IMG/VR virus record: IMGVR_UViG_3300008110_010000
Span: 124,001 to 188,000 of that record
Length of the DNA stretch: 64,000 bases
Strand: one strand, 5' to 3'
The position numbers and the translations under genes were made by a program. How positions within the stretch are numbered: the stretch's first letter is position 1; each line of letters starts with the position of its first letter. The notes under the pieces were generated by a model. That model saw nothing but the letters and a program-made list of their open reading frames with translations, was not told where the DNA came from and did not search any database. Below are positions 12,962 to 30,059 of this stretch, in pieces.

Positions 12962-13501
12962 ATGTCCCTTTTTGTTGTAGAGGGAGCCAGAAAGTCAGGT
13001 AAAACTTTTTTTGTCAGCTCCCAAAATACCTTTCCAGTTTTTAAGTTCGATTTTAACGGAGCTTATACAAATTTAGAACTCCCAGAGGGTGGAGAGATAA
13101 CTCATGGTATCGGATTAGGCAAGGAATTAATGGTTCATCAATTGAATAGAGATTCTTTTTTACCCGATTTAATCATGGATCGGGGGGTAATTACCAATTC
13201 CGTCTGGGGAATACTTAACAACCGGGTATCCCGCGATACAGTTTATCAGGAATTGGCTTACATGGTAAAAAATAATCTTTTTAAAGATGTCTTTTTCTTT
13301 TATGTTTATGGAACATACCAAGGAGAAAGAAAAAAAGACGTTTGGGACCACATGGATAAAATGATCCCGAAGGAAATAGAAATCTTTGATGAGATCATAG
13401 CTTATCTTTCGTTAGCCGGTGTTAAGATTCACAAGGTTGAAAACAAGTTTGATCTTGAATCGCTATCCGGATTTCAGACTATAATTAAGAACTTAAAATA
13501 A
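12962..13501 (+). CDS. P-loop nucleoside-monophosphate kinase-like protein (dNMP/thymidylate kinase fold)
   Basis: N-terminal Walker A VVEGARKSGKT and a DRG motif (IMDRGVITNSVWG) as in dTMP kinases. Confidence 0.65.
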   Translation: MSLFVVEGARKSGKTFFVSSQNTFPVFKFDFNGAYTNLELPEGGEITHGIGLGKELMVHQLNRDSFLPDLIMDRGVITNSVWGILNNRVSRDTVYQELAYMVKNNLFKDVFFFYVYGTYQGERKKDVWDHMDKMIPKEIEIFDEIIAYLSLAGVKIHKVENKFDLESLSGFQTIIKNLK

Positions 13502-16377: not shown

Positions 16378-16394
16378 TACCTTATTTGTTTATC

Positions 16395-16431
16395 TATATA
16401 TCAACGTTTCCCCTGCAAGAAGAGATATATA
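16395..16431. promoter_or_regulatory. Back-to-back divergent GATATATA motifs
   Basis: TATATATC at 16395-16402 (minus-strand motif facing RimK) and GATATATA(AATA) at 16424-16431 facing ATG 16447. Confidence 0.7.
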
Positions 16432-16446
16432 AATAAAAAAGTAAAG

Positions 16447-17100
16447 ATGAAGGTACTAAGGTATTCGGAATTTAGTTTAAACGAATCTCATGAGGAGTAC
16501 TTTAAGCTCTTAGAAGGACTAGATGCTCATTATCAAAACATGGTTGAAAATGGATATAGTCAGAATCAGATCGATGAGGGTATATGGGATTTAGTAGGAT
16601 CACTAGGTGCAGGATTTACTGACCGAATGAAAAACTATGCTGCTGGATGGCTTTTGAAGCAATTGGGTCTTCCCTCAGATAACAACTTTTTAAGTGAATT
16701 TGCAAAGAACATTATCGAACAAGTAAGTTTTAGAAATATAGGAAGATATTTCGGAGAAGGATCCTGTAAATATTGGATAGATGCCATCGGAAAAGGACTA
16801 TTGGAGACACTAGAAGAAAAAGCGCTTGCCGTTATCTTATCCAGAGGAATTGGAATAGACATTAACATGAGCGGAGGTTTTATGGGAACACTTGCCGGAT
16901 CAATGAGAGAGGCTTTAACTAATTATATAAACTCAACACAATTTGTGGAATCTTTGAGTGATAAACTTGAGGGTGTAGTTTGTGGTCAGGGAACTTCTTT
17001 TACCAACATATTCGGAGGTAAATTCTCAGAAAAAGATATAGAAAATGCTGCTATGGGAAAAGAGAAAAGCGGCGGTATTCTGGATATATTAGGTATATAA
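16447..17100 (+). CDS. Putative internal head protein (start revised to ATG 16447)
   Basis: MKVLRYSEFSLNES N-terminus directly after the promoter motif. The longer 16327 start would overlap the divergent RimK gene. Gly-rich amphipathic segments. Confidence 0.55.
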   Translation: MKVLRYSEFSLNESHEEYFKLLEGLDAHYQNMVENGYSQNQIDEGIWDLVGSLGAGFTDRMKNYAAGWLLKQLGLPSDNNFLSEFAKNIIEQVSFRNIGRYFGEGSCKYWIDAIGKGLLETLEEKALAVILSRGIGIDINMSGGFMGTLAGSMREALTNYINSTQFVESLSDKLEGVVCGQGTSFTNIFGGKFSEKDIENAAMGKEKSGGILDILGI

Positions 17101-17410: not shown

Positions 17411-17944
17411 ATGGAAAAAAAGATATTAAGTTTTGAAGAGTTTTCTAAGCGATATGCAGAAGGAACTCTCGACCAAGATCTTCCACAAGAAGAATCACCA
17501 GAAGATGATTCAATGGATTTTGACGGTGGATCTGATGATGTAATGGGAGATGAGGAAACTGAAGAAGAAAACGAAGAAACTGAAGGTGGATCCGAAGATG
17601 ATTTTGAAATAGGCGGGGAAGATACCGAATCTGAAGAAGATACCGAATCTGACGAAGACGAGGAAGATATGGGAATGGATGATGAAGAAGAGGAGCAAGA
17701 GGAAATGGAAGAGTCTGAAGAAGATGCATTCGAGAGAGAGGTTCAAGAATACAATGAAGAATACGACTTCGAAGAAGACGAGAATTTAGAAGAGGAAATG
17801 GACGAAGAAGAAATGGAAGGTGGAGATCAAGAGGATATGGATTGGGATCATGAAATGGGCATGGAGGAATCCGATGAAATGGAAGAGGAAGAAGAAGAAT
17901 CAGAGGAAATTTCAAATCCAGCTTTCAATAAATTTTTTAACTAA
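17411..17944 (+). CDS. Extremely acidic low-complexity protein, putative prohead core/internal protein
   Basis: Roughly half D/E. N-terminus MEKKILSFEEF, C-terminus NPAFNKFFN. Own promoter motif and terminator. Confidence 0.6.
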   Translation: MEKKILSFEEFSKRYAEGTLDQDLPQEESPEDDSMDFDGGSDDVMGDEETEEENEETEGGSEDDFEIGGEDTESEEDTESDEDEEDMGMDDEEEEQEEMEESEEDAFEREVQEYNEEYDFEEDENLEEEMDEEEMEGGDQEDMDWDHEMGMEESDEMEEEEEESEEISNPAFNKFFN

Positions 17945-18017: not shown

Positions 18018-18572
18018 ATGAGTTTAAGGCATATAAAATCTTTCAGTTCTCTTTTCGAAAGCACTTCGGCGGGATCCCACGACCGAGGATATTCTGATGT
18101 TCCCCCTTTTAAATACGCCATAAATTTTGATCACAGGATCGGTTATTCTAAAGATGATTTTGCAAAGGATCTGAATGAGATCTACCTTAGATCTTCCTCT
18201 AAGGAAAAATCCGAAATGATGGATTTTATATTTAAGAATTCAGGGATATTAAAGATCTCACAAATACCAGAGCTTTCTCAGGAAAAAATAGATACTTTAA
18301 TAAAAGACCTGGAGGGGTTTTTAGATTCTAGAGCAGAGCATAATCCTAAAATGCTTCCAGACGGTTATTTGTTATGCTACGAGAATTTGAGGAAAAAGGG
18401 AAGAAGATGCGACGTGTATTATTCCCCTTCTTTGAAATCTGTGAAGATCTGCTTTACTGACTCATATCCAGAGAAAGACGACGAAGTTATTTCCCTAGAA
18501 GATTTTATCCCAGATTCAGTGGGAATTAATCAGAAAGAATTTTCCAATTTATTGAGTAGAATGGAAGGTTAA
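18018..18572 (+). CDS. Hypothetical protein with capsid-targeting-like N-terminus
   Basis: MSLRHIKSFSSLFES; no other recognisable motif. Confidence 0.5.
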   Translation: MSLRHIKSFSSLFESTSAGSHDRGYSDVPPFKYAINFDHRIGYSKDDFAKDLNEIYLRSSSKEKSEMMDFIFKNSGILKISQIPELSQEKIDTLIKDLEGFLDSRAEHNPKMLPDGYLLCYENLRKKGRRCDVYYSPSLKSVKICFTDSYPEKDDEVISLEDFIPDSVGINQKEFSNLLSRMEG

Positions 18573-19324
18573 AAAGAGGAGAGATAGTTTTTATAATTGC
18601 TAACTATAAATTCTATAGATCTTTCTTTTATTAATTCAAAAGATATCTCATCTTCACCTTTAGATTTTTCAAGATCAACTATAATGAAGCAATCATTATA
18701 TTTAGAAAAGTTTTTTACTTCTTTCTTTACGAAATCAAATATTTTTTTATCAGATTTACTGTAAACAGGGGAGGGATCTAAAAGTTCACTTAATAGGAGA
18801 CCAACCTGCTCGGTTTCATCTACTGTTATGATTGAAAAGAGCCAGGAGTATATTTTTATCTTCTTATTTTTATTATTTCTAATTATCATGTAACCCCTAT
18901 CACTATTTAGTGATTTATCATTATGTATTTTGAATTCTAGGGATTTTTCTATTTCCTCTATATAGGGATTGATTTTTGTGATAAATTTTTCCAAAACCTC
19001 CAGACTGTTATCCAAGATATAATCAACTTCTTCATTCTCTATTAGGCTAACAGTGAGATCCTTTGTTTTTTCTATTTCCTCCTGCGTCATAGCTCTTACT
19101 GTCTTGTCACTTAGTTTTTGGAACTTTTGAAAGCTCTTAAGATCATTATAAACCCGGTTAATCTTTTGTATTTGATCTGAGTATTTTTTCTGATCTAAAT
19201 CAGATTCGACAGACTGCAAAAAATCCATTAGAACATAGTATTTGTGCTCCATATCAACAGGAGATTGTAAAAACCAGTATGGATGTAAACTCTTCATTGG
19301 TATCTGATATAATATATAACTCAA
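18569..19324 (-). CDS. Hypothetical protein resembling a conserved Bacteroidota protein (likely start at internal MKSLHPYWF)
   Basis: WFLQSPVDMEHKYYVLMDFLQ ... GYMII ... LIKERSIEFI recalls a Bacteroidota hypothetical family (from memory, unverified). Confidence 0.5.
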   Translation of the reverse strand: MSYILYQIPMKSLHPYWFLQSPVDMEHKYYVLMDFLQSVESDLDQKKYSDQIQKINRVYNDLKSFQKFQKLSDKTVRAMTQEEIEKTKDLTVSLIENEEVDYILDNSLEVLEKFITKINPYIEEIEKSLEFKIHNDKSLNSDRGYMIIRNNKNKKIKIYSWLFSIITVDETEQVGLLLSELLDPSPVYSKSDKKIFDFVKKEVKNFSKYNDCFIIVDLEKSKGEDEISFELIKERSIEFIVSNYKNYLSSF

Positions 19325-19395
19325 AACAGGAATATTTTCGGATTAAAAAATAATTTTCTCGAATCTGGAAACTTTCCTTTAAAACCCTGCTAAAA

Positions 19396-19412
19396 TTGTT
19401 ATCTGATAACAA
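19396..19412. promoter_or_regulatory. Perfect 17-bp palindrome, putative operator in a divergent intergenic region
   Basis: TTGTTATC-T-GATAACAA between the 19324(-) gene and the first glycan gene. Confidence 0.45.
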
Positions 19413-19442
19413 CCCGGGGTATGAATATATCTATAGTATCTA

Positions 19443-20027
19443 ATGAGCCCCTTTCTTGTAATAGCTTATTTTACCAAAGGAAACCAATACGAAGCACTCT
19501 CGGAAAATCTTAGCAGATCCTGTTCAGAGTTTGGTATACCCCTTCACTTAAGCCCCATCCAAAATCTAGGAACCTGGGAAAAGAACACGCACTTTAAAGC
19601 AAACTTTATTTTAGATTGTTTATCAGGATTCTCCCAAAATTTAGTTTATGTTGATGTCGACGCAGTCTTTAGAAGTTACCCAACTTTATTCCAAACAATA
19701 GATTGCGATATTGCATATCGAACTGAGAATTTTAGATGGAGAAGAAACGAGGCATTAAGTGGAACTATCTTCCTTGCCAACAACGAAAGAACTAAAAGAC
19801 TGGTTGAAAAATGGATAGAGATCAATAATGTCATAAAATCGAATAGAATGGACCCAGAAACATGGGAACAGAAAAATATGCAAAGAGCTCTCGAAGTGTG
19901 TGATGACGTGTCTTACCAGAACTTGCCACCCGAATACACATTTATCTTTGATCATTCTAAAAGATTGCATCCTGGGGTCTCTCCTGTTATTGAGCATTTT
20001 CAGGCTTCTAGAAAAGCTGATATATAA
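19443..20027 (+). CDS. GT-A fold glycosyltransferase (nucleotide-diphospho-sugar transferase-like)
   Basis: KANFILDCL...LVYVDVDAVF (DxD), SGTIFL, EQKNM, LPPEY, VIEHFQASR. Confidence 0.78.
   Translation: MSPFLVIAYFTKGNQYEALSENLSRSCSEFGIPLHLSPIQNLGTWEKNTHFKANFILDCLSGFSQNLVYVDVDAVFRSYPTLFQTIDCDIAYRTENFRWRRNEALSGTIFLANNERTKRLVEKWIEINNVIKSNRMDPETWEQKNMQRALEVCDDVSYQNLPPEYTFIFDHSKRLHPGVSPVIEHFQASRKADI
20019..20026 (+). promoter_or_regulatory. Putative late promoter motif GATATATA inside the glycan cluster
   Basis: Exact motif 19 nt upstream of ATG 20046, overlapping the end of the preceding gene. Confidence 0.55.
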
Positions 20028-20045
20028 AAAAAACACGATTTATAG

Positions 20046-21239
20046 ATGTCTTTTGAAAAATTTAGAAGGTTAAGAAAACCTATTGAAGATCTATTTGGAA
20101 AGATTGGAAATACTCCAGCTCCTCCAGATGGGCCTTTTCGAAGGCCTCCCACTGTTTCCATGTCAACCGAGGAAAAGTTAGCTCTTATGGAAAAAGAAAG
20201 TAATGAAGCGAACATCCCTGTTGATTACCCTAAAATGACTACTACCATTTATAGTTATTACGCAGACTTCCAACAAAATAATTATTACAAAAATTACGCC
20301 CTCAATTTAATTGATAGATGTAAAAAATTCGGTGTAGCATATAATATTTCGGAAAGAACTTCGAGGGGTAGCTACGGAGCAAATTGCTTAATGAAGCCAG
20401 AGTTTGTCCTTGAAAAATTAAAAGAAAGTAAAGCACCTTTAATCTGGATGGACTGTGACACTGATTTTAAATCTTCATTTTCAGAGTTTAATAATATATC
20501 TGAGGATATTGGAATGGCAACACATAGCGGGGATTTATCCGGAATAAAAGCTTCGCCTCTTTTTTTCAACTATACTGCAGGATCCTTCAAGATAATAAGG
20601 GAATGGGTAGTTCATTGCAGATCTGCTTTTTTAAAAGGAATCCCTGAATTAGATCATGATGCTTTAAAACACTACGTTTTGCCGCATCTTAGGGGAAATT
20701 ATTCGGTTTTTCTACTTTCTCAGAATTGGAATGATTTTGTACATGGAAAATATATTCATAACGGCAATTCTAGGGTTGATGGGAAAATGGAGACCCATAG
20801 GCAAGTGGGGGTAGACGATGATACTAGGGCAAGATACAGTCGAGATGTAAAAACATTTCACGTTTATTTTGAAGAAAAGTCTGAAATAGTCTTTTCTAGT
20901 GCTTTAAAATTTCTAAATAATTTTTCAGATTATGCTCGTCTTAAATTTCATTTCGACCAGGGTTTAGAAAAAATCTCCTGTTCATCCCTAGAATTTCACA
21001 AACTCTATACAGAAAGCGGAGGCAATACAACATTTAGCGAAAACCACTTTACCGATCATAGCCCCTTGAATGGTGAAATAATTCTAGGAGTATCTGGGGT
21101 AAAAGATATAGAAAAAGACTGGGACTCTAAAATATCAGGTGAAATACAGGGAGGGAAAAATCCTCTCTATGTTTTAAATTATAAAGATGACGGACTAGGA
21201 AAAATAACAATAAAGGAGGGATTTAGTTTATGGAATTAA
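20046..21239 (+). CDS. GT-A glycosyltransferase-like protein with unknown C-terminal domain
   Basis: KPEFVLEKL...LIWMDCDT (DxD), ASPLFF, DHDAL; paralogous layout to the 19443 protein. Confidence 0.68.
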   Translation: MSFEKFRRLRKPIEDLFGKIGNTPAPPDGPFRRPPTVSMSTEEKLALMEKESNEANIPVDYPKMTTTIYSYYADFQQNNYYKNYALNLIDRCKKFGVAYNISERTSRGSYGANCLMKPEFVLEKLKESKAPLIWMDCDTDFKSSFSEFNNISEDIGMATHSGDLSGIKASPLFFNYTAGSFKIIREWVVHCRSAFLKGIPELDHDALKHYVLPHLRGNYSVFLLSQNWNDFVHGKYIHNGNSRVDGKMETHRQVGVDDDTRARYSRDVKTFHVYFEEKSEIVFSSALKFLNNFSDYARLKFHFDQGLEKISCSSLEFHKLYTESGGNTTFSENHFTDHSPLNGEIILGVSGVKDIEKDWDSKISGEIQGGKNPLYVLNYKDDGLGKITIKEGFSLWN

Positions 21240-22084
21240 TCAAAGGATTCGGTTTACCGTTCCCCGCGGAGTACTCTTCGTGTTCTAATTTACCCCCTAA
21301 ATCTTTTTCATGGACAACAGGTGATGCTGATATTCACGTTTATATAGACAATAGAATTTTTGACGGACTAGAAACCCCTAGGCATGAATTTAAATTCGGT
21401 TGGTTGTGTGAATCTCGAGAAATTGCTATAGAAATTTATAGTGCTGTTTATCAGAATCCAGGAAGATATAAAAACAAGTACGCTGGCATTTTTACCTGCG
21501 AGGAGTTTTTAATTCAGTCGGATCCTGAATTTTTCTTTTATGCCCCACCGGGATCTAATCTTCCTTGGACTAAACCGGATGAAATGCGAATTTATCAGAA
21601 GAGCAAAAAATGCTCAATGATATGTTCACCTAAAGCAAGAACTGATGGACATAAATTCAGATTAGAGGTAGCTGACAAGTTAAAAGAATCTCTCGATCTT
21701 TTTGGGGGAGCACACAACTCGCCTAGAATTGGTGATGGCTCTGGACCAAATGGGGATTGGTGGCGATCGAAACTTCCAGCTTTGAAAGATTACATGTTTT
21801 CCGTGGTTTTTGAGAATGCTGTCTATGAAAAATATTACACCGAAAAAATAACCGATTGTTTTGCTACCGGGACAATCCCTGTTTACTGGGGGTCTAGAAA
21901 AGTTTGCGAGGATTTTAATCCCGATGGTATAATTTTCTATAACGATTTAAAATCATTAGATGATTTAACCCACGATCTTTACAATTCGATGTTAGATAGT
22001 GTTATTGATAATTTAGAGAGAGTTAAAAAGTTAGAATCTGCTGACGATATCATATTTAATAAAATAAAATCTATTTGTGGATAA
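21230..22084 (+). CDS. GT10-family (alpha-1,3/1,4-fucosyltransferase-like) glycosyltransferase
   Basis: YMFSVVFENAVYEKYYTEKITDCFATGTIPVYWG is the GT10 GDP-fucose-binding motif. Confidence 0.85.
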   Translation: MELIKGFGLPFPAEYSSCSNLPPKSFSWTTGDADIHVYIDNRIFDGLETPRHEFKFGWLCESREIAIEIYSAVYQNPGRYKNKYAGIFTCEEFLIQSDPEFFFYAPPGSNLPWTKPDEMRIYQKSKKCSMICSPKARTDGHKFRLEVADKLKESLDLFGGAHNSPRIGDGSGPNGDWWRSKLPALKDYMFSVVFENAVYEKYYTEKITDCFATGTIPVYWGSRKVCEDFNPDGIIFYNDLKSLDDLTHDLYNSMLDSVIDNLERVKKLESADDIIFNKIKSICG

Positions 22085-22910
22085 GTCGTTAAAATTAAAT
22101 TGGCATAAAAGTTCAAATTTTGGGGATCAGCTTAATCCGTATTTAGTTAAAAAAATGTGGGGATTCAATTCTTTTAAAATTAATGAAGGAAGTAAGGACC
22201 CACACGTCATGATGATAGGATCGATATTAAACGAAGCAAATTCTCAGACCCTAGTTTTAGGATCAGGATTCGTAGGGGTTAATAGGTTTTTTGAGGGTGT
22301 TCCTAGGATAATTACTGTGAGAGGAAAAAAGACCCTCCAGATGGTTAATGACGTAGGGGTAAAAACTGACGAAATTAGTTTAGGTGATCCAGCAATTCTT
22401 ATACCTGATTACTTTACACCATCCCCAGGAATCGACAAATACGATATAGGTATAATTCCCCATATAATAGACATGGAGTATGCTCAAAAAATATTCGGAA
22501 GAAAAAGAGGTTCTAGGATAATAGATTTAAGACTAGTTGGAGAAACGTTTGATGAAATGGAATCAATCATAAATCAAATATGCTCATGTCGATGTATTAT
22601 TTCCAGCAGCTTACATGGATTAATCATAGCGCATACTTACGGAATACCAGGGATTTGGTGTGAATTTTCTGATATGGTTATAGGGGAGGGATTTAAATTC
22701 AAAGATTATATGTCAGCCCATGGTGTGGATGAAGATTCTGTGCCTTATTTAAATCTAAAAGAACCTAATAGCTTTCTCACTATACCGGAAATTAAAACCC
22801 TTGCTAAAAATGTTATAGTAGATTCCAATCACGAAAGAGAAAAAATGAGAGCTATCATTAGCAACGTTTATGATATTATTTGTTCTAATAAAAAAATGTA
22901 CCTTCTATAG
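22077..22910 (+). CDS. Polysaccharide pyruvyl transferase
   Basis: NFGDQL, IGSIL, VRGKKT, GDPAIL, GIIPH, SSSLHGLIIAHTYGIP, FKFKDY. Confidence 0.9.
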   Translation: MDKSLKLNWHKSSNFGDQLNPYLVKKMWGFNSFKINEGSKDPHVMMIGSILNEANSQTLVLGSGFVGVNRFFEGVPRIITVRGKKTLQMVNDVGVKTDEISLGDPAILIPDYFTPSPGIDKYDIGIIPHIIDMEYAQKIFGRKRGSRIIDLRLVGETFDEMESIINQICSCRCIISSSLHGLIIAHTYGIPGIWCEFSDMVIGEGFKFKDYMSAHGVDEDSVPYLNLKEPNSFLTIPEIKTLAKNVIVDSNHEREKMRAIISNVYDIICSNKKMYLL

Positions 22911-23564
22911 ATGGAAAAACTAGATCTTAAAAAAATAACAGCCGTTGTGATAGATGGAAGGGGTTATTTAGAAGAGAGATATAACAGATTTAAAGAGATA
23001 GTTTCCTTTATGCAAAAGCATATAGAATTTGATTCTATAAAGATGTTTTTGGTTGAAGATCCTAAAATTCCCGGAATTGAATTTAATAAGATAAACAGAT
23101 TTGGAATTTCGGATTATTCTAAATTTTGTTTGCACGAATTGACAAATTATATTAGCACTGATTTCTGTTTAATATTTCAAGACGATGGTTTTGTTTTAAA
23201 TCCTGGTTACTGGAGTGATGAATTTTATATGTATGATTATATTGGATCCCCTTGGCCTCTTTATATAGGATGGCCAGAGGAGGGAAAGCAAGTAGGAAAC
23301 GGAGGATTCTCATTAAGGAGTAAAAGGTTATTAGAATATTCAAAAACATTAACACACCACACGACGGAAAATGAGGACACATTCTTACTTGATGATAGAA
23401 AGGCATTAGATGATGCTGGTATTAAAATAGCTCCTGTGGAGATAGCAAGAAAATTTTCCATAGAAAATCATATGGATAGTGATCACAGTATTCATAATTG
23501 TTTTGGATTTCATGCTAAGCATTTATTAGAGGAGTGTTTGGAAATAATTAGAAAAGAAAAATGA
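22911..23564 (+). CDS. DUF5672-like GT-A protein
   Basis: LIFQDDGFVLNP, YDYIGSPW, VGNGGFSLRSK, EDTF, FGFH. Confidence 0.78.
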   Translation: MEKLDLKKITAVVIDGRGYLEERYNRFKEIVSFMQKHIEFDSIKMFLVEDPKIPGIEFNKINRFGISDYSKFCLHELTNYISTDFCLIFQDDGFVLNPGYWSDEFYMYDYIGSPWPLYIGWPEEGKQVGNGGFSLRSKRLLEYSKTLTHHTTENEDTFLLDDRKALDDAGIKIAPVEIARKFSIENHMDSDHSIHNCFGFHAKHLLEECLEIIRKEK

Positions 23565-24289
23565 AAGTAATGGCATATTATCCCATTCATTATGGGACTG
23601 AGTATTTAGAATCTTCTATAAAATCTATAGACGATCAGGTAGATAAAATATTAATTTTATATTCTGCTACCCCCAGCTATGGACACTTAACTGATATAGA
23701 ATGTCCAGAATCTGAAAATGATATAAAAGATGTTGCATTTTCAGCTTCTTCTAAAATAGTATGGAAGAAGATAGAAGCTTATAACGAGGGAAATCATAGA
23801 AATATTGGATTTCAAGAATCTAATGATTATGATATAATGTTAACATTAGATTCTGATGAGGTATGGAATCCAACATCCCTTGATAAATGTATAAAAGAAA
23901 CATATGACGGCGAAGCTTGGAGAAGAAATATTACGGGATTTGTACATTTTTGGAAATCCTTTAACTGGGTATGTAGGGATGGATTTCAGCCTGGTAGAAT
24001 TTTCAATCTTAGGAGAAATAACAATATAGAGGTTCCTATTGAAGGGACAATATATCATTTTGGATATGCTCAGTCTAATAAAATCATAGATTATAAATTT
24101 GAAATTCATGGCCATAAGAATGAAATAAAACCCGGATGGCTAGAAAACACGTATTATAAATGGGAGCCAGGAATGAGGGATTTACATCCTACTGGCGGTG
24201 CATGGGATCAAGCTATTCCTTTTGATAAGAATTCATTACCAGATATACTTAAATCCCATCCTAATTACGATAAAGAAATAATAAAATAA
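23561..24289 (+). CDS. GT2-like glycosyltransferase
   Basis: YLESSIKSI, EGNHRN, LTLDSDEVW (DxD), IYHFGY. Confidence 0.7.
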   Translation: MKVMAYYPIHYGTEYLESSIKSIDDQVDKILILYSATPSYGHLTDIECPESENDIKDVAFSASSKIVWKKIEAYNEGNHRNIGFQESNDYDIMLTLDSDEVWNPTSLDKCIKETYDGEAWRRNITGFVHFWKSFNWVCRDGFQPGRIFNLRRNNNIEVPIEGTIYHFGYAQSNKIIDYKFEIHGHKNEIKPGWLENTYYKWEPGMRDLHPTGGAWDQAIPFDKNSLPDILKSHPNYDKEIIK

Positions 24290-24294
24290 AAAAT

Positions 24295-24873
24295 ATGGAC
24301 ATGGAAAAAATTTTATCAGAGATACTCAAAGTTGGTAAAGATCAATTAGATTCTATTGATTTAAATGATTACAGAAAGATTACGGATTCTATTAACACCC
24401 CTAAAGAGTGGTTTTATATGCAATCCGGGGTAGAGCATTACAGATTGCTCGCATTTATAAGTGGACTTTTTGAAAACGAAAGCTTATTAGATATAGGAAC
24501 ATACCAGGGGAGTTCTTCCATAGCAATGTCATATAATTCTAAAAATTCAATAACTTCTTTTGATGTTAATCATCAACCTGAAATTTCTAAAATTAAAATA
24601 CCAAATATTAATTATAAAATAGGTAACGTTTTGGAATTTACTGATTTAATTATCAAATCTCCTTTTATATTATTAGATACCTATCACGATGGTTCTTTTG
24701 AGGCTGAGTTCATGGAAGAAATGATAAAAATTAATTACAGAGGAATTGTTTTATTCGATGACATACACCTTAGCGGACCTATGGAAACATTTTGGAATTC
24801 TATTGATTCTGAAAAGTATGATTTAACTAGTAAGGGTCATTATACAGGTACAGGTTTAGTTTATTTTAAATAA
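24295..24873 (+). CDS. Class I SAM-dependent O-methyltransferase
   Basis: LLDIGTYQGSSS, ILLDTYHDG, VLFDDIH. Confidence 0.8.
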   Translation: MDMEKILSEILKVGKDQLDSIDLNDYRKITDSINTPKEWFYMQSGVEHYRLLAFISGLFENESLLDIGTYQGSSSIAMSYNSKNSITSFDVNHQPEISKIKIPNINYKIGNVLEFTDLIIKSPFILLDTYHDGSFEAEFMEEMIKINYRGIVLFDDIHLSGPMETFWNSIDSEKYDLTSKGHYTGTGLVYFK

Positions 24874-24884
24874 AATTCATTTAT

Positions 24885-25397
24885 ATGGGAGAATTAACAA
24901 TGGGGCATAGATCATACGGGAATGTTACAAGAAGGGGAGTTCATAATTCGGTTATTATTGGAAAATACTGCTCGATAGCTTCAGGATTGATAGTCGATGG
25001 AGGATTTGGACATAATACCGAGTTTATATCAACTTATCCATTTAGTGTAATGTTTGATAAATGTGGACATTTAACGGGTCATCCTGTTTGGAAAGGAGAT
25101 GTCATAATAGGAAACGATGTTTGGATAGGGGAGGACTGCTTAATAATGAGCGGGGTAACAATCGGTGATGGTGCAGTTATAGGAGCAAGATCTATCGTAA
25201 CAAAAGATATTGACCCATATTCTATAAATGTAGGATCACCTTCTCGCAGGGTAAAAAAAAGATTTACGGAAGAACAAATATCGGATCTTTTAAAAATAAA
25301 ATGGTGGGATTGGGATGAGGATAAAATTTTAGAAAATTCACATCTTTTAATGGGCAAAGAAATAAACCATTTTATAGATAAACATAAAATATATTAA
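24885..25397 (+). CDS. Hexapeptide-repeat (CatB/XAT-like) O-acetyltransferase
   Basis: IIGKYCSIA, STYPF, GDVIIGNDVWIG, GVTIGDGAVIGARSIVTKD, IKWWDW. Confidence 0.9.
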   Translation: MGELTMGHRSYGNVTRRGVHNSVIIGKYCSIASGLIVDGGFGHNTEFISTYPFSVMFDKCGHLTGHPVWKGDVIIGNDVWIGEDCLIMSGVTIGDGAVIGARSIVTKDIDPYSINVGSPSRRVKKRFTEEQISDLLKIKWWDWDEDKILENSHLLMGKEINHFIDKHKIY

Positions 25398-25410
25398 TAA
25401 AAAAAAGTAT

Positions 25411-26109
25411 ATGCAAGAATCACAAAACAAAGATGTTCAATTGATAAAATATCTTGATATCGAAATAATCATTACTGAACAAAGTGCTAAATACCACGGA
25501 AGCTTTACCGGGGGAAAAGTCTACGAAAGCGATGTTGTGGAAAGATTTTTAAATGATATACCAGAAAATGGCACCGTATTAGATATTGGAGCCTGCACAG
25601 GTTCGTATGCCATGTTGGATTTAATAAAATCTGGTATAAAAATACATTCATTTGAACCTTCTAGGGTATATCACGAGCTGGTTAAAAACATATCTATAAA
25701 CGGAAGTAAAACTATGTGTTATAACTATGCGGTGTCTGATAAAGAGGGTATATTTGACTTTAATGAAATAGTAGAAGACTTACCCATTGCACTATCTATG
25801 CTAGGTGGTAAACCTGCTTCCCATAAAAATTATAGAACGTTTGAGGTTAAAACTGTTACGATTGATAGTTTAAATTTAAACCCTGATATCATTAAAATAG
25901 ATACAGAGGGTCATGAGCTTATGGTTTTAAAGGGAGGAGAAAAAACAATTAACACTTTACATCCTATTATTTATTGCGAATATAGTCAGGAAAATACATC
26001 TCAATATGGATACAATGCTGACGATTCTTTAAATCTATTAAAAGAATGGGGTTATGAGATTGAATTAATTAATGGTAACATTATAGCCAAATACCCAGTA
26101 CATAATTAA
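25411..26109 (+). CDS. FkbM-family methyltransferase
   Basis: VLDIGACTG, HSFEP, NYAVSD, TIDSL, IIKIDTEGHELMVLKG. Confidence 0.9.
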   Translation: MQESQNKDVQLIKYLDIEIIITEQSAKYHGSFTGGKVYESDVVERFLNDIPENGTVLDIGACTGSYAMLDLIKSGIKIHSFEPSRVYHELVKNISINGSKTMCYNYAVSDKEGIFDFNEIVEDLPIALSMLGGKPASHKNYRTFEVKTVTIDSLNLNPDIIKIDTEGHELMVLKGGEKTINTLHPIIYCEYSQENTSQYGYNADDSLNLLKEWGYEIELINGNIIAKYPVHN

Positions 26110-26123
26110 ATCGTTAATATTTT

Positions 26124-27059
26124 ATGAAGTATAAATTAGCATTATTTGGATCCTCTGGTTTAGTTGGTTCAAATATTTTAAAAAAAATAGACACGGATAA
26201 GTATGAAGTGCTATCACCAATAAGAAAGGATTTAGATCTCTTGGATGAGAAAAAGGTACTAGATTGGTTTTTAAAAAATCGTGTAGATTATGTTATTCTA
26301 GCTGCTGCCAGAGTTGGAGGTATAGTTGCAAATGCAACATATCCCACAGAATATCTTTACGAGAATCTAACTATCCAGAATAATGTGATTATGTCTGCTT
26401 TTAAAAGTGGTGTTGATAATCTTGTTTTTCTTGGATCATCTTGCATTTATCCTAGAGAATGTCAACAACCAATAAAGGAAGAGTATTTGTTAACTGGGCC
26501 ATTAGAAAAGACCAATAAATCATATGCTCTAGCAAAGATAGCTGGCATTCAATTGTGCGATTCAATTAGAGAGCAGTATGGTAAAAAATATTATTCTTTA
26601 ATGCCTTGTAATTTATATGGACCTGGTGATAATTTTAATCATGAAGCTTCCCACGTAATCCCTGGGATGATGATTAAAATTGATAGAGCTAAAGAAGCTG
26701 GATCTGAAGAATTAAATCTGCTGGGTACAGGTAGACCATTTAGGGAATTCTTATTCATAGAGGATTTAGCAGATGGTGTAATTTTTGTGATGGAAAATCA
26801 TAAAGGAGAGGATGGAATCATTAACTTAGGTTCAGGTGAGGAAGTTACCATCAAACAACTTGCGGAAATACTAGTTAAAGAAATGGATTACGAGGGAAAA
26901 ATAATTTTTAATACAAACGGACCAGACGGAACCCCTAGAAAGGTTTTGGATAATTCTAAGATAAACTCAATTGGATGGAAATCTAAAATAAAACTAGAAG
27001 ATGGTATAAAAAGAACTGTTAAGTGGTTCTATGAAAATAAGGAATCAATAAGAATATGA
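26124..27059 (+). CDS. fcl: GDP-L-fucose synthase (GDP-4-keto-6-deoxymannose epimerase/reductase)
   Basis: [50 protein letters not shown]. Confidence 0.95.
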
Positions 27060-28063
27060 AAGTAGCATTAATAACGGGGGTAAATGGACAGGATGGATCT
27101 TACCTAGCAGAACTCCTCCTAGAGAAAGGATATTTTGTTCACGGAACTATTAGAAGATCTTCTTCTTTTAATTCTTCCAGAATTGAACATTTTAGAGATC
27201 ATCCTAATTTTAAAAGACATTATATAGATTTAACAGATTACGGGAGTGTTTCCAGTGTTATTTCGAAAATACAACCGGAAGAGGTTTATAATTTAGGTGC
27301 ACAAAGTCATGTTAAAATTTCTTTCGAGATTCCTAATTACACTGGACAGGTTGATGCAATAGGAACATTGAATGTGTTAGAAGCGATTCGCACTCATTCC
27401 CCGAGTTCCAAACTTTATCAAGCTTCGACCTCTGAGCTTTATGGTAAGGTTCAGGAAACTCCTCAAAAAGAAACTACCCCCTTTTATCCAAGATCTCCCT
27501 ATGGAGTAGCAAAGCTCTATGGTTTTTGGATTATTAAAAACTATAGAGAATCCTATGATATGTTTGCATGCAATGGAATTCTGTTCAACCACACATCTCC
27601 TAGAAGAGGAGAAAACTTCGTAGAGAAAAAAATAATTCAAACTCTTTGTGATATCAAAAGAGGAAGAACTGAAATATTAACTTTAGGCAATTTATCTGCC
27701 AAAAGAGATATAGGGCATGCTAAAGAATATGTTGAGGGAATGTGGAGAATGCTACAGCAAGAGAAGCCTGATGATTTTGTTTTAGCCACTGGAGTAACAT
27801 ACTCTATTAAGGAAATGGTGGAAATGGTTTGTAAAAAAATAGGGATAGAAATTTACTGGGAGCCGCAAGAAGTAGGGGAGATAGGCATTGACAGAAAAAC
27901 TAACAAGATAATTGTTGGAGTAGATCCTAAATATTATAGACCAGCTGAAGTTGAACTACTCTTAGGCGATGCTACAAAGGCAAAGGATATTTTAGGATGG
28001 GAACCTAAACTGGATCTTTCACAGATATTTGATGAGATGATAGAAGAAACTATGAAAAGCTAA
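27056..28063 (+). CDS. gmd: GDP-mannose 4,6-dehydratase
   Basis: [66 protein letters not shown]. Confidence 0.97.
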
Positions 28064-28288
28064 TTATTTAGATACTATTTCATTAGCTTTAAGAAGCTGA
28101 TCCAGATCCTTCATTTTATAGCTAGTTTGTCCTGGTGAGCCCCATTTATTTTGATCTCCCCAATTAATGAATCCCTGATTATTTAAATGCTTTCCTGAAT
28201 TATAAGAAAAATCGTATTTTCCCTCTGCTTTGGCAGCCTCTGAAAATTCGTCCATGTTAGATATATTTTTGTAACCGTATTTTTCCAT
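28064..28288 (-). CDS. Small hypothetical protein
   Basis: ORF following 28291(-) by 2 nt; its stop abuts the gmd stop. Confidence 0.5.
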   Translation of the reverse strand: MEKYGYKNISNMDEFSEAAKAEGKYDFSYNSGKHLNNQGFINWGDQNKWGSPGQTSYKMKDLDQLLKANEIVSK

Positions 28289-28290
28289 TA

Positions 28291-28866
28291 TTATTTCTTT
28301 TTCTTTCTATTTGCCTTAGCTCTTTGGTAAAGCTTTTTGTCATGCATTTTAGTTGTTTTACCCCCCGTTACAAAAGAATTAACTCTAGCCATTGCCCATT
28401 GTTGAGGCGTAGTTCCAGGCACGTGTCCGGTTTTCCATGCTGCATAACCCTTTCTCCAGACCTGCTTTAATATTCCTAACGGAAATCCTGTTTTGTCGGA
28501 CTTGTTCTTTAGTGCCTTGTGAACCGGACTTGTAATCTTATCAACGGATTCATTGATAAAATCCTCGTTTTCGTTGATTAATTCCATGAATGCCTCGAGA
28601 AATAATTCCTCCCCCTCGTTCATAGCTTCATCAAACTGGTTGAAATTTTTTAGTAGCTTACTTTCTCCAAACATTTTCTTGTATTTACTTGTATATTTAC
28701 TAGGCTTTGTGTCAACCTTTTTACCAACTCCAGCTTTTCTTGACTTATAATCAGCGTCCCATTCCTGATATGCGCTAGAGTCGTCGTCAGCTTTTTTCCC
28801 ATGTTTTTTGATTTCCTTCTTCATCACATTGGGATTCTTTGTCAAATATTTTTTAGGAAGCTTCAT
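28291..28866 (-). CDS. Two-part basic protein with DUF5824-like domain (LKQVWRKGYAAWKTGH...QWAMARVNSF)
   Basis: C-terminal motif recalled from a family found in large phages and prasinoviruses (unverified). TKPSKYT motif; internal MNE/INE sites. Confidence 0.55.
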   Translation of the reverse strand: MKLPKKYLTKNPNVMKKEIKKHGKKADDDSSAYQEWDADYKSRKAGVGKKVDTKPSKYTSKYKKMFGESKLLKNFNQFDEAMNEGEELFLEAFMELINENEDFINESVDKITSPVHKALKNKSDKTGFPLGILKQVWRKGYAAWKTGHVPGTTPQQWAMARVNSFVTGGKTTKMHDKKLYQRAKANRKKKK

Positions 28867-28872
28867 AATATT

Positions 28873-28880
28873 TATATATC
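28873..28880 (-). promoter_or_regulatory. Putative late promoter motif GATATATA(AATA), minus strand
   Basis: TATATATC on the + strand, 6 nt upstream of the 28866 ATG. Confidence 0.65.
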
Positions 28881-28984
28881 CACAGGGTCGGAATCAAATC
28901 GGGTGATTGGTCTATAATTAATTGCAGAGAAATGTAAAGAATCATGCCTCCATGTTCAATAAGCTCAAAAAAATAATAAACATC

Positions 28985-29572
28985 ATGACGGAAAAGGAAA
29001 CCCCCGAACTAAAGGAAGATTATAGCCAATTTTCCTATCAATGGATTAAAGGAGATCTACTTTCTAAAGTCCAGCACTATCAAGATATAGTTGAAGAAGG
29101 GGATAGAAAATATATAGTTTTTACCGATAAAAGCAGAATTCTATTGGATCTACTTGATGAATATATGATCAGAGTGGATAAGGGATTTGAAGAGATCAGT
29201 GCTCCTTCCCAGGATTTACCAATTTTCCAAGAAGACCCATTAACTCACAAGGGGGTAAAAACGAGGGATACGAAATATGAACCTAAGATTCAGCAAGATG
29301 AAAGTCCTATTTTTTCTCTTTTATCTAAACAGAAAGAAAACTGGGTTGATGTAGATCTCCAATTAAGTATAAATCTGCCTCCAAAAAGTTTATGGGATGT
29401 CTTAGTTTCTTCTTTTGATGATGCTGAAAAAGACATCTTAGAATACGTAACAAAGGATTTAGACATCGAGGTAGTGAGACAATCCCTCAGAAATTCCATA
29501 AAAGATATATATAAAAAGCAAAAGAATATCCCAACTAAAAATGTCAGAACCCAAGATTCTTCTCCAGAATGA
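28985..29572 (+). CDS. Hypothetical protein (start revised to ATG 28985)
   Basis: A-rich leader AAAAATAATAAACATC precedes ATG 28985, in frame with the track ORF 28922. Confidence 0.55.
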   Translation: MTEKETPELKEDYSQFSYQWIKGDLLSKVQHYQDIVEEGDRKYIVFTDKSRILLDLLDEYMIRVDKGFEEISAPSQDLPIFQEDPLTHKGVKTRDTKYEPKIQQDESPIFSLLSKQKENWVDVDLQLSINLPPKSLWDVLVSSFDDAEKDILEYVTKDLDIEVVRQSLRNSIKDIYKKQKNIPTKNVRTQDSSPE

Positions 29573-30059
29573 TCATATAGAGGTTATCGAGATAGGTAAT
29601 AGGGTTGGGATCCAGCAAAAAAATCCTTCCGTTATTATTTTACCATATACAACTGATGAATCCGGTAACCCAAAATCACTAGGACTTATTTCAGAGCCTA
29701 ACTCCCTAAAGGAAGGAGGAATGTCTCTAACTGTGATAACAGGATCCCCCGAAGACTCTGACGAGGATATTTTAGAAACAGCTAAGAGGGAATTGAAGGA
29801 AGAAGCTGGATACGAGATTAATGATATAGAAAAATGGGAATATCTTGGGAACATTAAGACCTCAAAAATTGTAATCAATGGTAATCCTGCATTTGGTGTA
29901 GATGTAACTGGGATGGAAAGAGGACAAAAATCTGGGGACGGATCTAAAAATGAAGAGAATTCCAAGTTTTCATTAGTTAATCTTAGTGATGCTATTAATC
30001 TGGATGATGCTCTAGTTTCCTGTTTATTTTTAAAAATATTTCAAAACAAACTAATTTAA
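29541..30059 (+). CDS. Nudix hydrolase
   Basis: Nudix box GSPEDSDEDILETAKRELKEEAGY. GATATATA at 29504-29511 upstream. Confidence 0.85.
   Translation: MSEPKILLQNDHIEVIEIGNRVGIQQKNPSVIILPYTTDESGNPKSLGLISEPNSLKEGGMSLTVITGSPEDSDEDILETAKRELKEEAGYEINDIEKWEYLGNIKTSKIVINGNPAFGVDVTGMERGQKSGDGSKNEENSKFSLVNLSDAINLDDALVSCLFLKIFQNKLI

What the first reader, a model, noticed from the sequence alone, without database searches (positions are those of the whole stretch)
19443..28063. Phage-encoded 11-gene pathway for a fucosylated, pyruvylated, acetylated and methylated glycan, wired into the late regulon
Seen: contiguous or overlapping genes for four GT-A-type proteins (19443, 20046, 22911, 23561), a GT10 fucosyltransferase, a pyruvyl transferase, two methyltransferases, an O-acetyltransferase, Fcl and Gmd. 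None shows an obvious multi-pass membrane pattern, and there is no Wzx/Wzy/ABC exporter or undecaprenyl priming transferase in the window. The cluster lies between head and baseplate modules and carries the GATATATA motif (20019; variant at 19423). Known: Gmd plus Fcl make GDP-L-fucose, the GT10 donor. Chloroviruses and mimiviruses build their own capsid/fibril glycans, and some mycobacteriophages glycosylate virions, but with far simpler gene sets. Inference: a self-contained cytoplasmic system decorating virion proteins with a complex capped glycan (shielding, host-capsule mimicry, adhesion). Alternatives are sugar hypermodification of DNA or remodelling of host surface glycans for superinfection exclusion.
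Basis: partly seen in the sequence, partly recalled or inferred. Interest (0 to 1): 0.88.

Follow-up and report, generated by a model that had tools for sequence, protein, structure and literature searches.

The report
Jumbo-phage fucose glycan gene cluster
A large freshwater phage carries a real 11-gene operon of soluble enzymes that make GDP-fucose and build a fucosylated, pyruvylated, acetylated and methylated sugar chain. Its core is kept across a whole phage lineage while the tailoring genes are swapped, but what the sugar is attached to (most likely virion proteins) is still unproven.

Summary
Window 19443-28063 is a tightly packed, same-strand run of 11 genes:
- four GT-A glycosyltransferases (two shown by predicted fold, one by Pfam, one only by a weak GT2 match plus motif);
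- a GT10 fucosyltransferase with the family motif;
- a pyruvyl transferase;
- an XAT-class acetyltransferase;
- one FkbM and one CCoAOMT-like methyltransferase;
- Fcl and Gmd.

None has a membrane segment. The window has no flippase, polymerase or priming transferase.

The element is a phage contig of at least 219 kb, distantly related to Lak and Flavobacteriia jumbo phages. Two other metagenome assemblies span both junctions at 99.85% identity, so this is not a chimera.

New here: relatives keep the locus in the same place with a conserved core (g1-g2-GT10-DUF5672-GT2-like, usually with Fcl and Gmd). The tailoring genes differ between phages. One cassette is 84-92% identical between phages whose core genes are only 49-63% identical.

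g2 is a family seen only in metagenomes, on contigs of up to 189 kb. A GATATATA motif before g2 is conserved in relatives and also precedes head genes.

The virion-glycosylation reading is the best fit, at about 0.5. It is inference only: comparable cyanophage clusters exist and are read as host-envelope genes.

Verdict: a new variant of a known kind, with interest about 0.6.

The parts
19325..19442 (.). Divergent intergenic control region between the 251-aa gene (18569-19324, minus strand) and g1. It holds a unique 8+1+8 palindrome, TTGTTATC-T-GATAACAA, at 19396-19412, and the motif variant GAATATATC at 19423-19431.
   Evidence: The palindrome occurs once in the window, against 0.09 expected. 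The block is conserved in relatives L139-L143, although the proteins on either side are only 64-72% identical.
19443..20027 (+). g1: small GT-A glycosyltransferase (Nucleotid_trans, GT77-like) with a DVD motif.
   Evidence: PF03407, E 1e-5, above cutoff. It is 64-65% identical in L139-L143 and 60% in L191. It is a paralogue of the g2 N-terminal part.
20019..20026 (+). GATATATA promoter-like motif, 27 nt before the g2 start, overlapping the g1 stop codon.
   Evidence: It sits at the same place in L139, L140, L141, L142 and L143.
20046..21239 (+). g2: 397-aa glycosyltransferase known only from metagenomes. It has a disordered N-terminus (residues 1-38), a GT-A core (about 60-265, with invariant W-x-D-x-D-T) and an extra alpha/beta C-terminal domain (270-397). 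It is the candidate initiating or acceptor-recognising enzyme (inference).
   Evidence: 81 homologues, all from metagenomes and none with a Pfam domain. The only GenBank-phage match is one weak partial hit, and there is none in the bacterial GT10 loci. AF2 pLDDT is 85. Foldseek matches GlyE, PBCV-1 A64R, LH3 and the Skp1 GalT, and giant-virus GTs.
21230..22084 (+). g3: short (284-aa) GT10 alpha-1,3/4-type fucosyltransferase.
   Evidence: PF00852 above cutoff. PDB H. pylori FucT at 1.6e-12. R144, E195-N196, Y202, T204-E205-K206 are invariant in 28 relatives. There are 601 metagenome relatives.
22077..22910 (+). g4: polysaccharide pyruvyl transferase (variable gene).
   Evidence: PF04230 at 2.6e-13, above cutoff. 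Among the fetched loci it is found only in this phage and, at 47%, in L093.
22911..23564 (+). g5: DUF5672 protein, a GT-A glycosyltransferase (core gene).
   Evidence: PF18922 at 5.7e-21. AF2 pLDDT 97. All Foldseek matches listed are GT-A enzymes, with TMq up to 0.59. The family has 3380 representative relatives.
23561..24289 (+). g6: probable GT2-like glycosyltransferase (core gene in most relatives).
   Evidence: Only a weak PF00535 hit, E 0.0096, below cutoff. It has a conserved D-A-D-E motif and a GT2-like N-terminal motif. It is 59-72% identical in L141, L144 and L147. The fold was not tested.
24295..24873 (+). g7: probable SAM-dependent O-methyltransferase, CCoAOMT/YrrM-like (variable gene).
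   Evidence: The single sequence is weak. A profile of 27 relatives hits PDB O-methyltransferases at 1.4e-6 to 3e-5. One relative is named 'predicted O-methyltransferase YrrM' by JGI.
24885..25397 (+). g8: left-handed beta-helix acetyltransferase of the xenobiotic (CatB/Vat) class, taken as a sugar O-acetyltransferase (variable gene).
   Evidence: Hexapep at 1.3e-11. Vat and CatB models at 4e-44 and 2e-43, far below their cutoffs of 300 and 350. PDB CatB at 8.5e-39.
25411..26109 (+). g9: FkbM-family methyltransferase (variable gene).
   Evidence: TIGR01444, 80.6 bits against 37.7. PF05050 at 2.4e-19.
26124..27059 (+). g10: GDP-L-fucose synthase (Fcl/GMER).
   Evidence: NF047922 at 1.6e-120, positions 6-308 of 308, 402 bits, below the cutoff of 500. 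It is 70-72% identical in close relatives.
27056..28063 (+). g11: GDP-mannose 4,6-dehydratase (Gmd).
   Evidence: TIGR01472, 493.6 bits against 415. PF16363 at 1.3e-138. It is 79-81% identical in close relatives.
28064..28288 (-). 74-aa hydrophilic protein next to the cluster. It is a speculative acceptor or decoration candidate, at low confidence.
   Evidence: It abuts the cluster in L139-L143 and lies inside it, on the same strand, in L191. In other relatives it sits in the head module instead, so the link is not exclusive.

Best explanation
This is a phage-owned operon of soluble cytoplasmic enzymes that builds a decorated, fucose-containing oligosaccharide.

Proposed pathway:
1. Gmd (g11) and Fcl (g10) turn host GDP-mannose into GDP-L-fucose.
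2. The GT10 enzyme (g3) adds fucose.
3. Four GT-A enzymes (g1, g2, g5, g6) add other sugars from host nucleotide sugars.
4. In this strain the chain is then capped by a pyruvate ketal (g4), O-acetyl (g8) and O-methyl groups (g7, g9).

The enzyme assignments are shown by sequence or predicted fold. The order of the steps is inferred.

The most likely acceptor is one or more virion proteins made in the same cytoplasm. This would parallel chlorovirus capsid, mimivirus fibril and mycobacteriophage capsid/tail-tube glycosylation. The metagenome-only enzyme g2, a GT-A core with an extra C-terminal domain, is the candidate for the first, protein-directed step.

The locus behaves like a serotype locus: a conserved core with exchangeable tailoring cassettes.
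For: Enzyme identities.

All 11 products are soluble, and the window has no multi-pass protein. The cluster and its flanks have no Bac_transf, Wzx, Wzy or ABC hit.

It belongs to the phage:
- Head protease and MCP lie upstream and baseplate genes downstream.
- GC of 0.31-0.36 matches the rest of the window.
- Two other assemblies span both junctions at 99.85% identity.

The locus has stayed in the lineage:
- It lies between the same flanking genes in L139-L143 and L191.
- The g2-GT10-DUF5672-g6 block also sits next to head genes in phages whose MCP is only 41% identical (L144-L146).

Other support:
- g2 is known only from metagenomes, on contigs of up to 189 kb.
- The tailoring genes vary: GT17-like, GT11, GT2, GT1-like, MT_24, FkbM, an extra SDR and a cytidylyltransferase.
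- One cassette is 84-92% identical between phages whose core genes are 49-63% identical.
- The GATATATA motif before g2 is conserved in relatives and also precedes the head protease and putative internal head proteins.
- Top structural matches of g2 and g5 include protein-directed GTs (GlyE, A64R, LH3, Skp1 GalT, glycogenin, UGGT).
- Precedents: giant-virus glycogene clusters with pyruvyl-, methyl- and glycosyltransferases, and soluble GTs with GMD/GMER in PBCV-1 (PMC9614988); mycobacteriophage capsid and tail-tube glycans (as cited in PMC12619734).
Against: - There is no direct evidence for any acceptor.
- No Ser/Thr-rich or repeat-bearing structural protein stands out near the cluster.
- GT-A fold matches say little about the acceptor, and the TM-scores are modest (0.3-0.6).
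- The 'structural module' also holds non-structural enzymes (AsnB-like, RimK-like, NUDIX, DUF5824), so position is weak evidence.
- The motif's timing is unknown.
- Cyanophage clusters with homologous GT10 and DUF5672 genes are conventionally read as host-envelope genes.
- Bacterial homologues of g3 sit in ordinary polysaccharide loci, whose soluble GTs act on lipid-linked acceptors.
Confidence: 0.5

Rival explanations
1. Host-envelope remodelling. The soluble enzymes act at the inner face of the membrane on the host's own undecaprenyl-linked LPS, capsule or O-glycan intermediates. The host's priming transferase, flippase and ligase then display an altered surface glycan. The benefit would be to block superinfection or to stop progeny sticking to debris.
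For: Most bacterial O-antigen and capsule GTs, pyruvyl, acetyl and methyl transferases are also soluble or peripheral. Full-length g3 relatives lie in bacterial sugar loci, some with Gmd and Fcl. Homologous GT10 and DUF5672 genes occur in cyanomyovirus clusters annotated as cell-wall or LPS genes. Strain-to-strain variation in the tailoring genes would fit matching to a variable host glycan.
Against: The core has been kept for a long time in a lineage with no sign of lysogeny in this window. g2 has no relative in the bacterial loci examined. The cluster shares its promoter-like motif with head genes, and late expression leaves little time to renew an outer surface. It has no initiating transferase of its own, so it would depend on one particular host intermediate while the cassettes move between phages.
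Confidence: 0.27
2. DNA hypermodification. The glycan is built on hydroxymethylated bases of the phage genome to evade restriction and CRISPR.
For: Phage GT-A and GT-B enzymes are known to put mono- to oligosaccharides on 5hmC (bioRxiv 10.1101/2023.12.21.572611). g5 carries DD and ED acidic motifs, as many GT-A enzymes do.
Against: Known DNA GTs sit beside C5-methyltransferase/5mYOX or ThyS-like genes. None was found in the ORFs scanned. That paper reports no fucose or GDP-sugar, and its GT-A class matches TarP best in the PDB, which is absent from the top 50 matches of g2 and g5. Pyruvyl, acetyl and methyl caps are typical of surface glycans.
Confidence: 0.05
3. Another acceptor: a free or lipid-bound intracellular glycan, a small molecule, or a non-virion phage or host protein (for example, modifying a host defence or surface-assembly protein).
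For: Nothing in the sequence fixes the acceptor. The neighbours include other protein- or metabolite-modifying enzymes: RimK-like ligase, AsnB-like amidotransferase and NUDIX.
Against: An 11-gene pathway with terminal caps and exchangeable cassettes is hard to explain for a purely internal target. No precedent was found in the literature searches.
Confidence: 0.13

Closest known systems
Mimivirus clade-specific fibril glycogene clusters (6-12 genes)
   Same: Both are virus-encoded clusters that combine nucleotide-sugar synthesis with several GTs plus pyruvyl and methyl transferases, and the content differs between clades (PMC9614988). g2 matches giant-virus GTs best in BFVD.
   Different: The host domain and virion type differ. 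The sugars differ too (Rha, Vio4NAc and bacillosamine-type against fucose). In mimivirus the glycans are shown on fibrils; here nothing is shown.
Chlorovirus PBCV-1 capsid (Vp54) glycosylation: A064R, A111/114R, A075L with GMD A118R and GMER A295L
   Same: The virus makes its own GDP-fucose, uses soluble cytoplasmic GTs without signal peptides, and methylates sugars. The A64R GT domain is among the top PDB matches of g2 and g5.
   Different: The PBCV-1 genes are scattered and multidomain. Here there are single-domain genes in one operon, with pyruvylation and acetylation added. Sequence identity is about 12%.
Mycobacteriophage virion glycosylation (Che8/Corndog/Myrna type; Freeman et al. 2023)
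   Same: It is the only tailed-phage case with glycans shown on capsid and tail-tube subunits made by phage GTs (cited in PMC12619734).
   Different: The primary paper could not be read here. From my own knowledge, it involves far fewer genes and no nucleotide-sugar synthesis. No sequence comparison with those GTs was made.
Cyanomyovirus 'cell-wall/LPS' gene clusters (S-SCSM1, S-SM2, S-SSM7, S-SCSM2R)
   Same: These are large phages with gmd, fcl, several fucosyltransferases and many GTs (PMC9602691; PMC12801897). Their GT10 is 36-39% identical to g3, and DUF5672 proteins in other cyanophages (S-B05, S-H68) are about 34% identical to g5.
   Different: The phage backbone is different (T4-like). 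There is no g2. The function is untested and usually assigned to the host envelope.
Bacterial O-antigen and colanic-acid type loci (gmd-fcl plus GTs plus WcaK-like pyruvyl and WcaB/F-like acetyl transferases)
   Same: The enzyme families and operon logic are the same. Bacterial g3 relatives sit in such loci.
   Different: This cluster has no initiating phosphoglycosyl transferase, Wzx, Wzy, Wzz, ABC transporter or ligase, and it sits in a phage genome.
'Moraphages' (200-307 kb freshwater jumbo phages of Bacteroidota; Arch Virol 2025)
   Same: The habitat, size range and predicted host phylum match. Four of their core orthologous groups are putative GTs, and the authors mention virion glycosylation as one option (PMC12619734).
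   Different: Whether this phage belongs to that lineage could not be checked. That paper does not mention fucose or GDP-sugars (0 hits), and the passages read describe no pathway or variable cassettes.

Membership tests
GT10 alpha-1,3/4-fucosyltransferase (g3) | Pfam PF00852 above its gathering score | tested here: met
   38.5 bits against 23.9.
GT10 alpha-1,3/4-fucosyltransferase (g3) | Conserved donor-binding motif F-E-N-x(5)-Y-x-T-E-K and the upstream Arg | tested here: met
   E195, N196, Y202, T204, E205, K206 and R144 are invariant in 28 relatives. The motif region aligns to H. pylori FucT residues 207-291. The role of these residues rests on my own knowledge of H. pylori FucT.
GT10 alpha-1,3/4-fucosyltransferase (g3) | Two-domain GT-B fold and GDP-fucose transfer | not tested
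   No model was made. The protein is short (284 aa against 371-420 aa in the solved enzymes), and its N-terminal half has no PDB sequence match.
GDP-mannose 4,6-dehydratase (g11) | NCBIfam equivalog TIGR01472 above cutoff, full length | tested here: met
   493.6 bits against 415, residues 2-334.
GDP-L-fucose synthase (g10) | NCBIfam equivalog NF047922 above cutoff | tested here: inconclusive
   E 1.6e-120 over positions 6-308 of 308, but 402 bits is below the cutoff of 500. It is adjacent to gmd.
Polysaccharide pyruvyl transferase (g4) | PF04230 above its gathering score | tested here: met
   51 bits against 25.3, covering profile positions 80-277 of 280. The CsaB equivalog is not met (16.8 against 213).
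Vat/CatB antibiotic acetyltransferases (g8) | NCBIfam equivalog score for Vat or CatB | tested here: not met
   150.6 against 300 and 148.1 against 350. The protein lacks about 50 N-terminal residues. It shares the fold class but should not be filed as a resistance enzyme.
GT-A glycosyltransferases (g1, g2, g5, g6) | GT-A fold or model match, plus a DxD-type motif | tested here: met
   g1 by Pfam. g2 and g5 by AF2 and Foldseek. The DVD, DCD, DD and DAD motifs are conserved. g6 alone is inconclusive.
Autonomous viral virion-glycosylation system (chlorovirus, mimivirus or mycobacteriophage type) | Virus-encoded nucleotide-sugar synthesis and soluble GTs | tested here: met
Autonomous viral virion-glycosylation system (chlorovirus, mimivirus or mycobacteriophage type) | The glycan is covalently attached to virion proteins | not testable with these tools
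   This needs virions or recombinant co-expression with mass spectrometry.
Autonomous viral virion-glycosylation system (chlorovirus, mimivirus or mycobacteriophage type) | Expression together with structural genes | tested here: inconclusive
   The GATATATA motif is shared with head genes and conserved in relatives, but there are no expression data.
Wzx/Wzy- or ABC-dependent surface polysaccharide locus | Initiating phosphoglycosyl transferase plus flippase/polymerase or ABC exporter | tested here: not met
   There is no such Pfam hit in the cluster or its flanks, and no multi-pass protein among 51 window ORFs.
Phage DNA sugar-hypermodification gene cluster | A GT adjacent to C5-MT/5mYOX or a ThyS-like hydroxymethylase; a GT-A of the TarP/JGT-like class | tested here: not met
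   No such domain was found in the scanned ORFs. TarP is not among the top 50 PDB matches of g2 or g5. The rest of the 219 kb genome was not seen, and JGT in AFDB could not be searched.

The most novel reading that the evidence does not exclude
A widespread lineage of freshwater jumbo phages, probably of Bacteroidota, carries an O-antigen-like 'virion serotype' locus. A conserved core is initiated on a structural protein by the metagenome-only transferase g2 and always involves a GT10 enzyme. Tailoring cassettes move between phages, giving each strain a different capped glycan coat made entirely in the cytoplasm. This would be the first surface-glycan diversity system of tailed-phage particles.
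Probability: 0.35. Interest if true: 0.85.

Novelty: new variant of a known kind. Interest (0 to 1): 0.6.

Why it matters
Virion glycosylation in tailed phages has been demonstrated only for a few mycobacteriophages. The large sugar-gene clusters of cyanophages have never been assigned a target.

This locus offers a compact test case:
- the donor pathway is clear (GDP-fucose);
- one transferase is known only from metagenomes;
- the locus sits at a fixed position;
- natural variants differ only in the tailoring genes.

If the glycan sits on the particle, phages would have a serotype-like surface layer. That could affect adsorption, aggregation, grazing, recognition by host defences and lectin-based capture of environmental viruses. 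If the glycan is instead put on the host, this would be the first worked example of how lytic jumbo phages rewrite the host surface. Either way the enzymes (a short GT10, DUF5672 as a GT-A, g2) are new glycoengineering parts.

Tried and rejected
- Megablast of the cluster against 50,697 GenBank phages found nothing. The lineage has no sequenced isolate; the best MCP matches are LR756500.1 at 45% and Lak phages at 39%.
- Profile-profile comparison of g5 and g6 with g2 gave no link (probability 0.1). PDB profile searches for g5 and g6 gave nothing. g5 was settled by structure prediction instead, and g6 stays weak.
- Sigma-70 promoter and intrinsic terminator scans over 18500-29600 were at the chance level (48 against 47.5; 6 against 7.0), so they say nothing about operon limits.
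- I looked for an obvious acceptor (Ser/Thr-rich or repeat-bearing proteins) among the neighbours and found none.
- The 74-aa neighbour looked cluster-linked, but it sits in the head module in other relatives. I kept it only as a low-confidence candidate.
- The mis-assembled bacterial fragment idea is rejected. Two other assemblies match across both junctions, the composition is phage-like, and the locus is syntenic in relatives.
- The idea that the window is a giant-virus fragment (DUF5824, giant-virus-like GTs) is rejected. It has an HK97-type MCP, a prohead protease and baseplate genes.
- The mycobacteriophage primary paper was not available.
- Membership in the 'moraphage' lineage could not be verified.

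Full report
**What is there**

The interval 19443-28063 holds eleven ORFs on the + strand. Their starts and stops overlap or lie at most 18 nt apart. Their identities are as follows.

| Gene | Coordinates | Identity | Evidence |
|---|---|---|---|
| g1 | 19443-20027 | GT-A, nucleotide-diphospho-sugar transferase | PF03407 above cutoff |
| g2 | 20046-21239 | GT-A core plus extra C-terminal domain | No Pfam hit; N-terminal part is a paralogue of g1; AF2 and Foldseek, see below |
| g3 | 21230-22084 | GT10 fucosyltransferase | PF00852 above cutoff; H. pylori FucT 1.6e-12; FEN..Y.TEK motif and upstream Arg invariant in 28 relatives |
| g4 | 22077-22910 | Polysaccharide pyruvyl transferase | PF04230 |
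| g5 | 22911-23564 | DUF5672, GT-A fold | AF2 pLDDT 97; all 50 Foldseek PDB matches listed are GT-A enzymes |
| g6 | 23561-24289 | Probable GT2-like | Sub-threshold GT2 hit plus a conserved DADE motif |
| g7 | 24295-24873 | Probable O-methyltransferase | Weak alone; a 27-sequence profile reaches O-methyltransferases at 1.4e-6 |
| g8 | 24885-25397 | CatB/Vat-class hexapeptide acetyltransferase | Far below the resistance-enzyme cutoffs |
| g9 | 25411-26109 | FkbM methyltransferase | |
| g10 | 26124-27059 | Fcl | 1.6e-120, full length, 402 bits against a 500 cutoff |
| g11 | 27056-28063 | Gmd | Above the equivalog cutoff |

For g2, an AlphaFold2 model built on 40 homologues (pLDDT 85, pTM 0.82) has a GT-A core and an extra alpha/beta C-terminal domain. 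In the PDB it matches GlyE, the PBCV-1 A64R capsid-glycosylation domain, LH3 and the Skp1 galactosyltransferase. In BFVD it matches giant-virus GTs.

No protein of the cluster has a hydrophobic 19-residue window of 1.6 or more, and the window contains no multi-pass protein. No priming transferase, flippase, polymerase or ABC-exporter domain was found in the cluster or its flanks. Only g6 is still weakly supported.

**What it sits in**

The window is part of IMG/VR contig IMGVR_UViG_3300008110_010000 (219,355 bp), at positions 124001-188000.

- It encodes a prohead protease and an HK97-type major capsid protein upstream.
- It encodes baseplate hub and wedge proteins downstream.
- The capsid protein is 45% identical to the 462 kb uncultured phage LR756500.1, 39% to Lak megaphages and about 31% to Tenacibaculum, Flavobacterium and Chryseobacterium jumbo phages. 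A Bacteroidota host is therefore likely but not shown.
- The stretch between the head and baseplate genes is not purely structural. It also holds an AsnB-like amidotransferase, a RimK-family ligase, a NUDIX protein and a DUF5824 protein.
- Composition across the cluster (GC 0.31-0.36, positive GC skew) matches the rest of the window.
- Contigs from two other metagenomes span both junctions at 99.85% identity. That disposes of the mis-assembly alternative.

**Comparative evidence (new)**

*Close relatives.* In relatives with MCP about 87% identical (L139-L143, L089-L093), the locus lies between the same flanking genes. It keeps g1, g2, g3, usually g5 and g6, and Fcl and Gmd at 52-81% identity.

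*Variable middle.* g7, g8 and g9 occur only in this phage, and g4 occurs only here and in L093. Relatives carry instead a GT17-like, GT2, GT11 or GT1-like enzyme, MT_24 or FkbM methyltransferases, a further SDR sugar enzyme or a cytidylyltransferase.

*Cassette exchange.* A three-gene cassette in L141 is 84-92% identical to one in L147. The core genes of the same two phages are only 49-63% identical. This points to recent exchange between phages.

*More distant relatives.*
- Phages whose MCP is only 41% identical (L144-L146) keep the g2-g3-g5-g6 block next to their head genes. L147 and L148 keep the same block, but their fetched stretches show no head genes.
- One relative (L191) keeps g1, g2, g3 and g5 at the same locus, without detectable g6, and replaces Gmd and Fcl with a fused double SDR.

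*Distribution of the families.*
- g2 has 81 homologues, all from metagenomes and none annotated. Apart from one weak partial hit it is absent from GenBank phages, and it is absent from the bacterial loci that carry g3 relatives.
- The short GT10 family has 601 metagenome members, on contigs of up to 474 kb. It has 36-39% relatives in T4-like cyanophages.
- Its full-length relatives in diverse bacterial genomes are at most 43% identical and sit in sugar loci.

**Regulation**

GATATATA occurs 13 times against 4.9 expected. Eleven copies lie 14-37 nt upstream of a start on the same strand. These starts include the head protease gene, several probable internal head protein genes and g2.

The copy before g2 is conserved in five relatives. 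The g1 upstream region is also conserved. It contains a palindrome that is unique in the window (19396-19412) and the GAATATATC variant. This supports co-regulation with neighbouring phage genes. It does not establish late timing.

**Mechanism**

*Shown by sequence or fold:* Gmd and Fcl give GDP-L-fucose, a GT10 enzyme uses it, four GT-A enzymes extend the chain, and pyruvyl, acetyl and methyl transferases tailor it. All are soluble.

*Inferred:* the order of the steps and the acceptor.

I favour virion proteins as the acceptor, at about 0.5, for these reasons:
- the core is an old, lineage-specific phage trait that includes a transferase not found in the bacterial loci examined;
- it shares its promoter-like motif with head genes;
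- it has no export route of its own;
- it mirrors the proven giant-virus and mycobacteriophage systems.

The main rival, at about 0.27, is action on host lipid-linked glycans. This is how the homologous cyanophage clusters are usually read.

DNA glycosylation is unlikely, at about 0.05:
- no C5-MT, 5mYOX or ThyS neighbour was found;
- fucose is not reported in that system;
- neither g2 nor g5 shows the TarP-like top match typical of the DNA GT-A class.

**Novelty**

Phage sugar clusters with gmd, fcl and fucosyltransferases are known in cyanophages. A 2025 paper on freshwater Bacteroidota jumbo phages lists four core GTs and mentions virion glycosylation as one option. Giant-virus glycogene clusters are a close organisational parallel.

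Three things are new:
- the conserved-core, swappable-cassette architecture at a fixed locus;
- the g2 family;
- the fold assignment of DUF5672.

I rate it a new variant of a known kind, with interest 0.6. Neither is established.

Noticed in passing
window 9762-10610, 16447-17100, 17411-17944, 18018-18572: Four proteins just upstream of the cluster begin with a similar N-terminal motif, roughly (K/R)-x-(Y/F)-S-E-F-(S/I)-x-x. This may be a capsid-targeting or propeptide signal of internal head proteins.
   Followed up: no
window 17411-17944: A 177-aa protein with 51% Asp+Glu and almost no basic residues. It could be an internal head, scaffold or DNA-mimic protein.
   Followed up: no
window 13501-14919 (+) and 14911-16377 (-): A convergent pair, overlapping at their 3' ends, conserved at 75-84% in close relatives. 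One member is an asparagine-synthase-like glutamine amidotransferase (PF00733, 2.5e-38). The other is a RimK-family ATP-grasp glutamate ligase (TIGR00768, above cutoff) with a C-terminal retropepsin-like stretch. This may be a second protein-modification system inside the head region.
   Followed up: partly
window 16327-17100: The listed TTG start is probably wrong. An ATG at 16447 is preceded by GATATATA at -23 and gives the shared N-terminal motif.
   Followed up: partly
window 19396-19412: A perfect 8+1+8 palindrome, TTGTTATC-T-GATAACAA, 31 nt before g1. It is unique in the window and partly conserved in relatives, so it is a candidate operator.
   Followed up: partly
L141 14880-17070 vs L147 13147-16016: A three-gene sugar cassette (MT_24-like, 344-aa SDR, 209-aa unknown) is 84-92% identical between two phages whose shared core genes are only 49-63% identical. 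This indicates recent cassette transfer between phages.
   Followed up: partly
L191 7019-7246 and 8548-10371: In a more distant relative the 74-aa neighbour gene lies inside the glycan cluster on the coding strand. Gmd and Fcl are replaced by one 607-aa protein with two SDR domains.
   Followed up: partly
L147 4273-19077: A relative with a much larger sugar locus of about 18 genes. It includes three more GT2-type enzymes, a rhamnosyl-O-methyltransferase-like protein, a cytidylyltransferase and a GT25-like protein, preceded by PhoH.
   Followed up: partly
window 24885-25397: The acetyltransferase is closest to the CatB/Vat antibiotic-acetylating class (E about 1e-44) but scores at half their cutoffs and lacks the N-terminal region. 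It should not be annotated as a resistance gene.
   Followed up: yes
window 3-707, 695-1399, 1457-2200, 55228-55908: Non-structural genes flank the head and tail modules: an Fpg/Nei-like DNA glycosylase (at the window edge), a PolB-exo-like 3'-5' exonuclease, a nucleotidyltransferase, and a homologue (37% identical) of the PhoH-domain protein of L147.
   Followed up: no
window 37625-41929: A 1434-aa protein with the only strong hydrophobic stretch in the window (residues 768-804) and no family match. It is a tape-measure candidate. The moraphage paper reports not finding a tape-measure protein in its lineage.
   Followed up: no
MH319729.1 2319-3550: A 5.4 kb marine single-cell-associated viral contig carries adjacent GT10 and DUF5672 genes, so this pair also travels together outside the lineage.
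   Followed up: no
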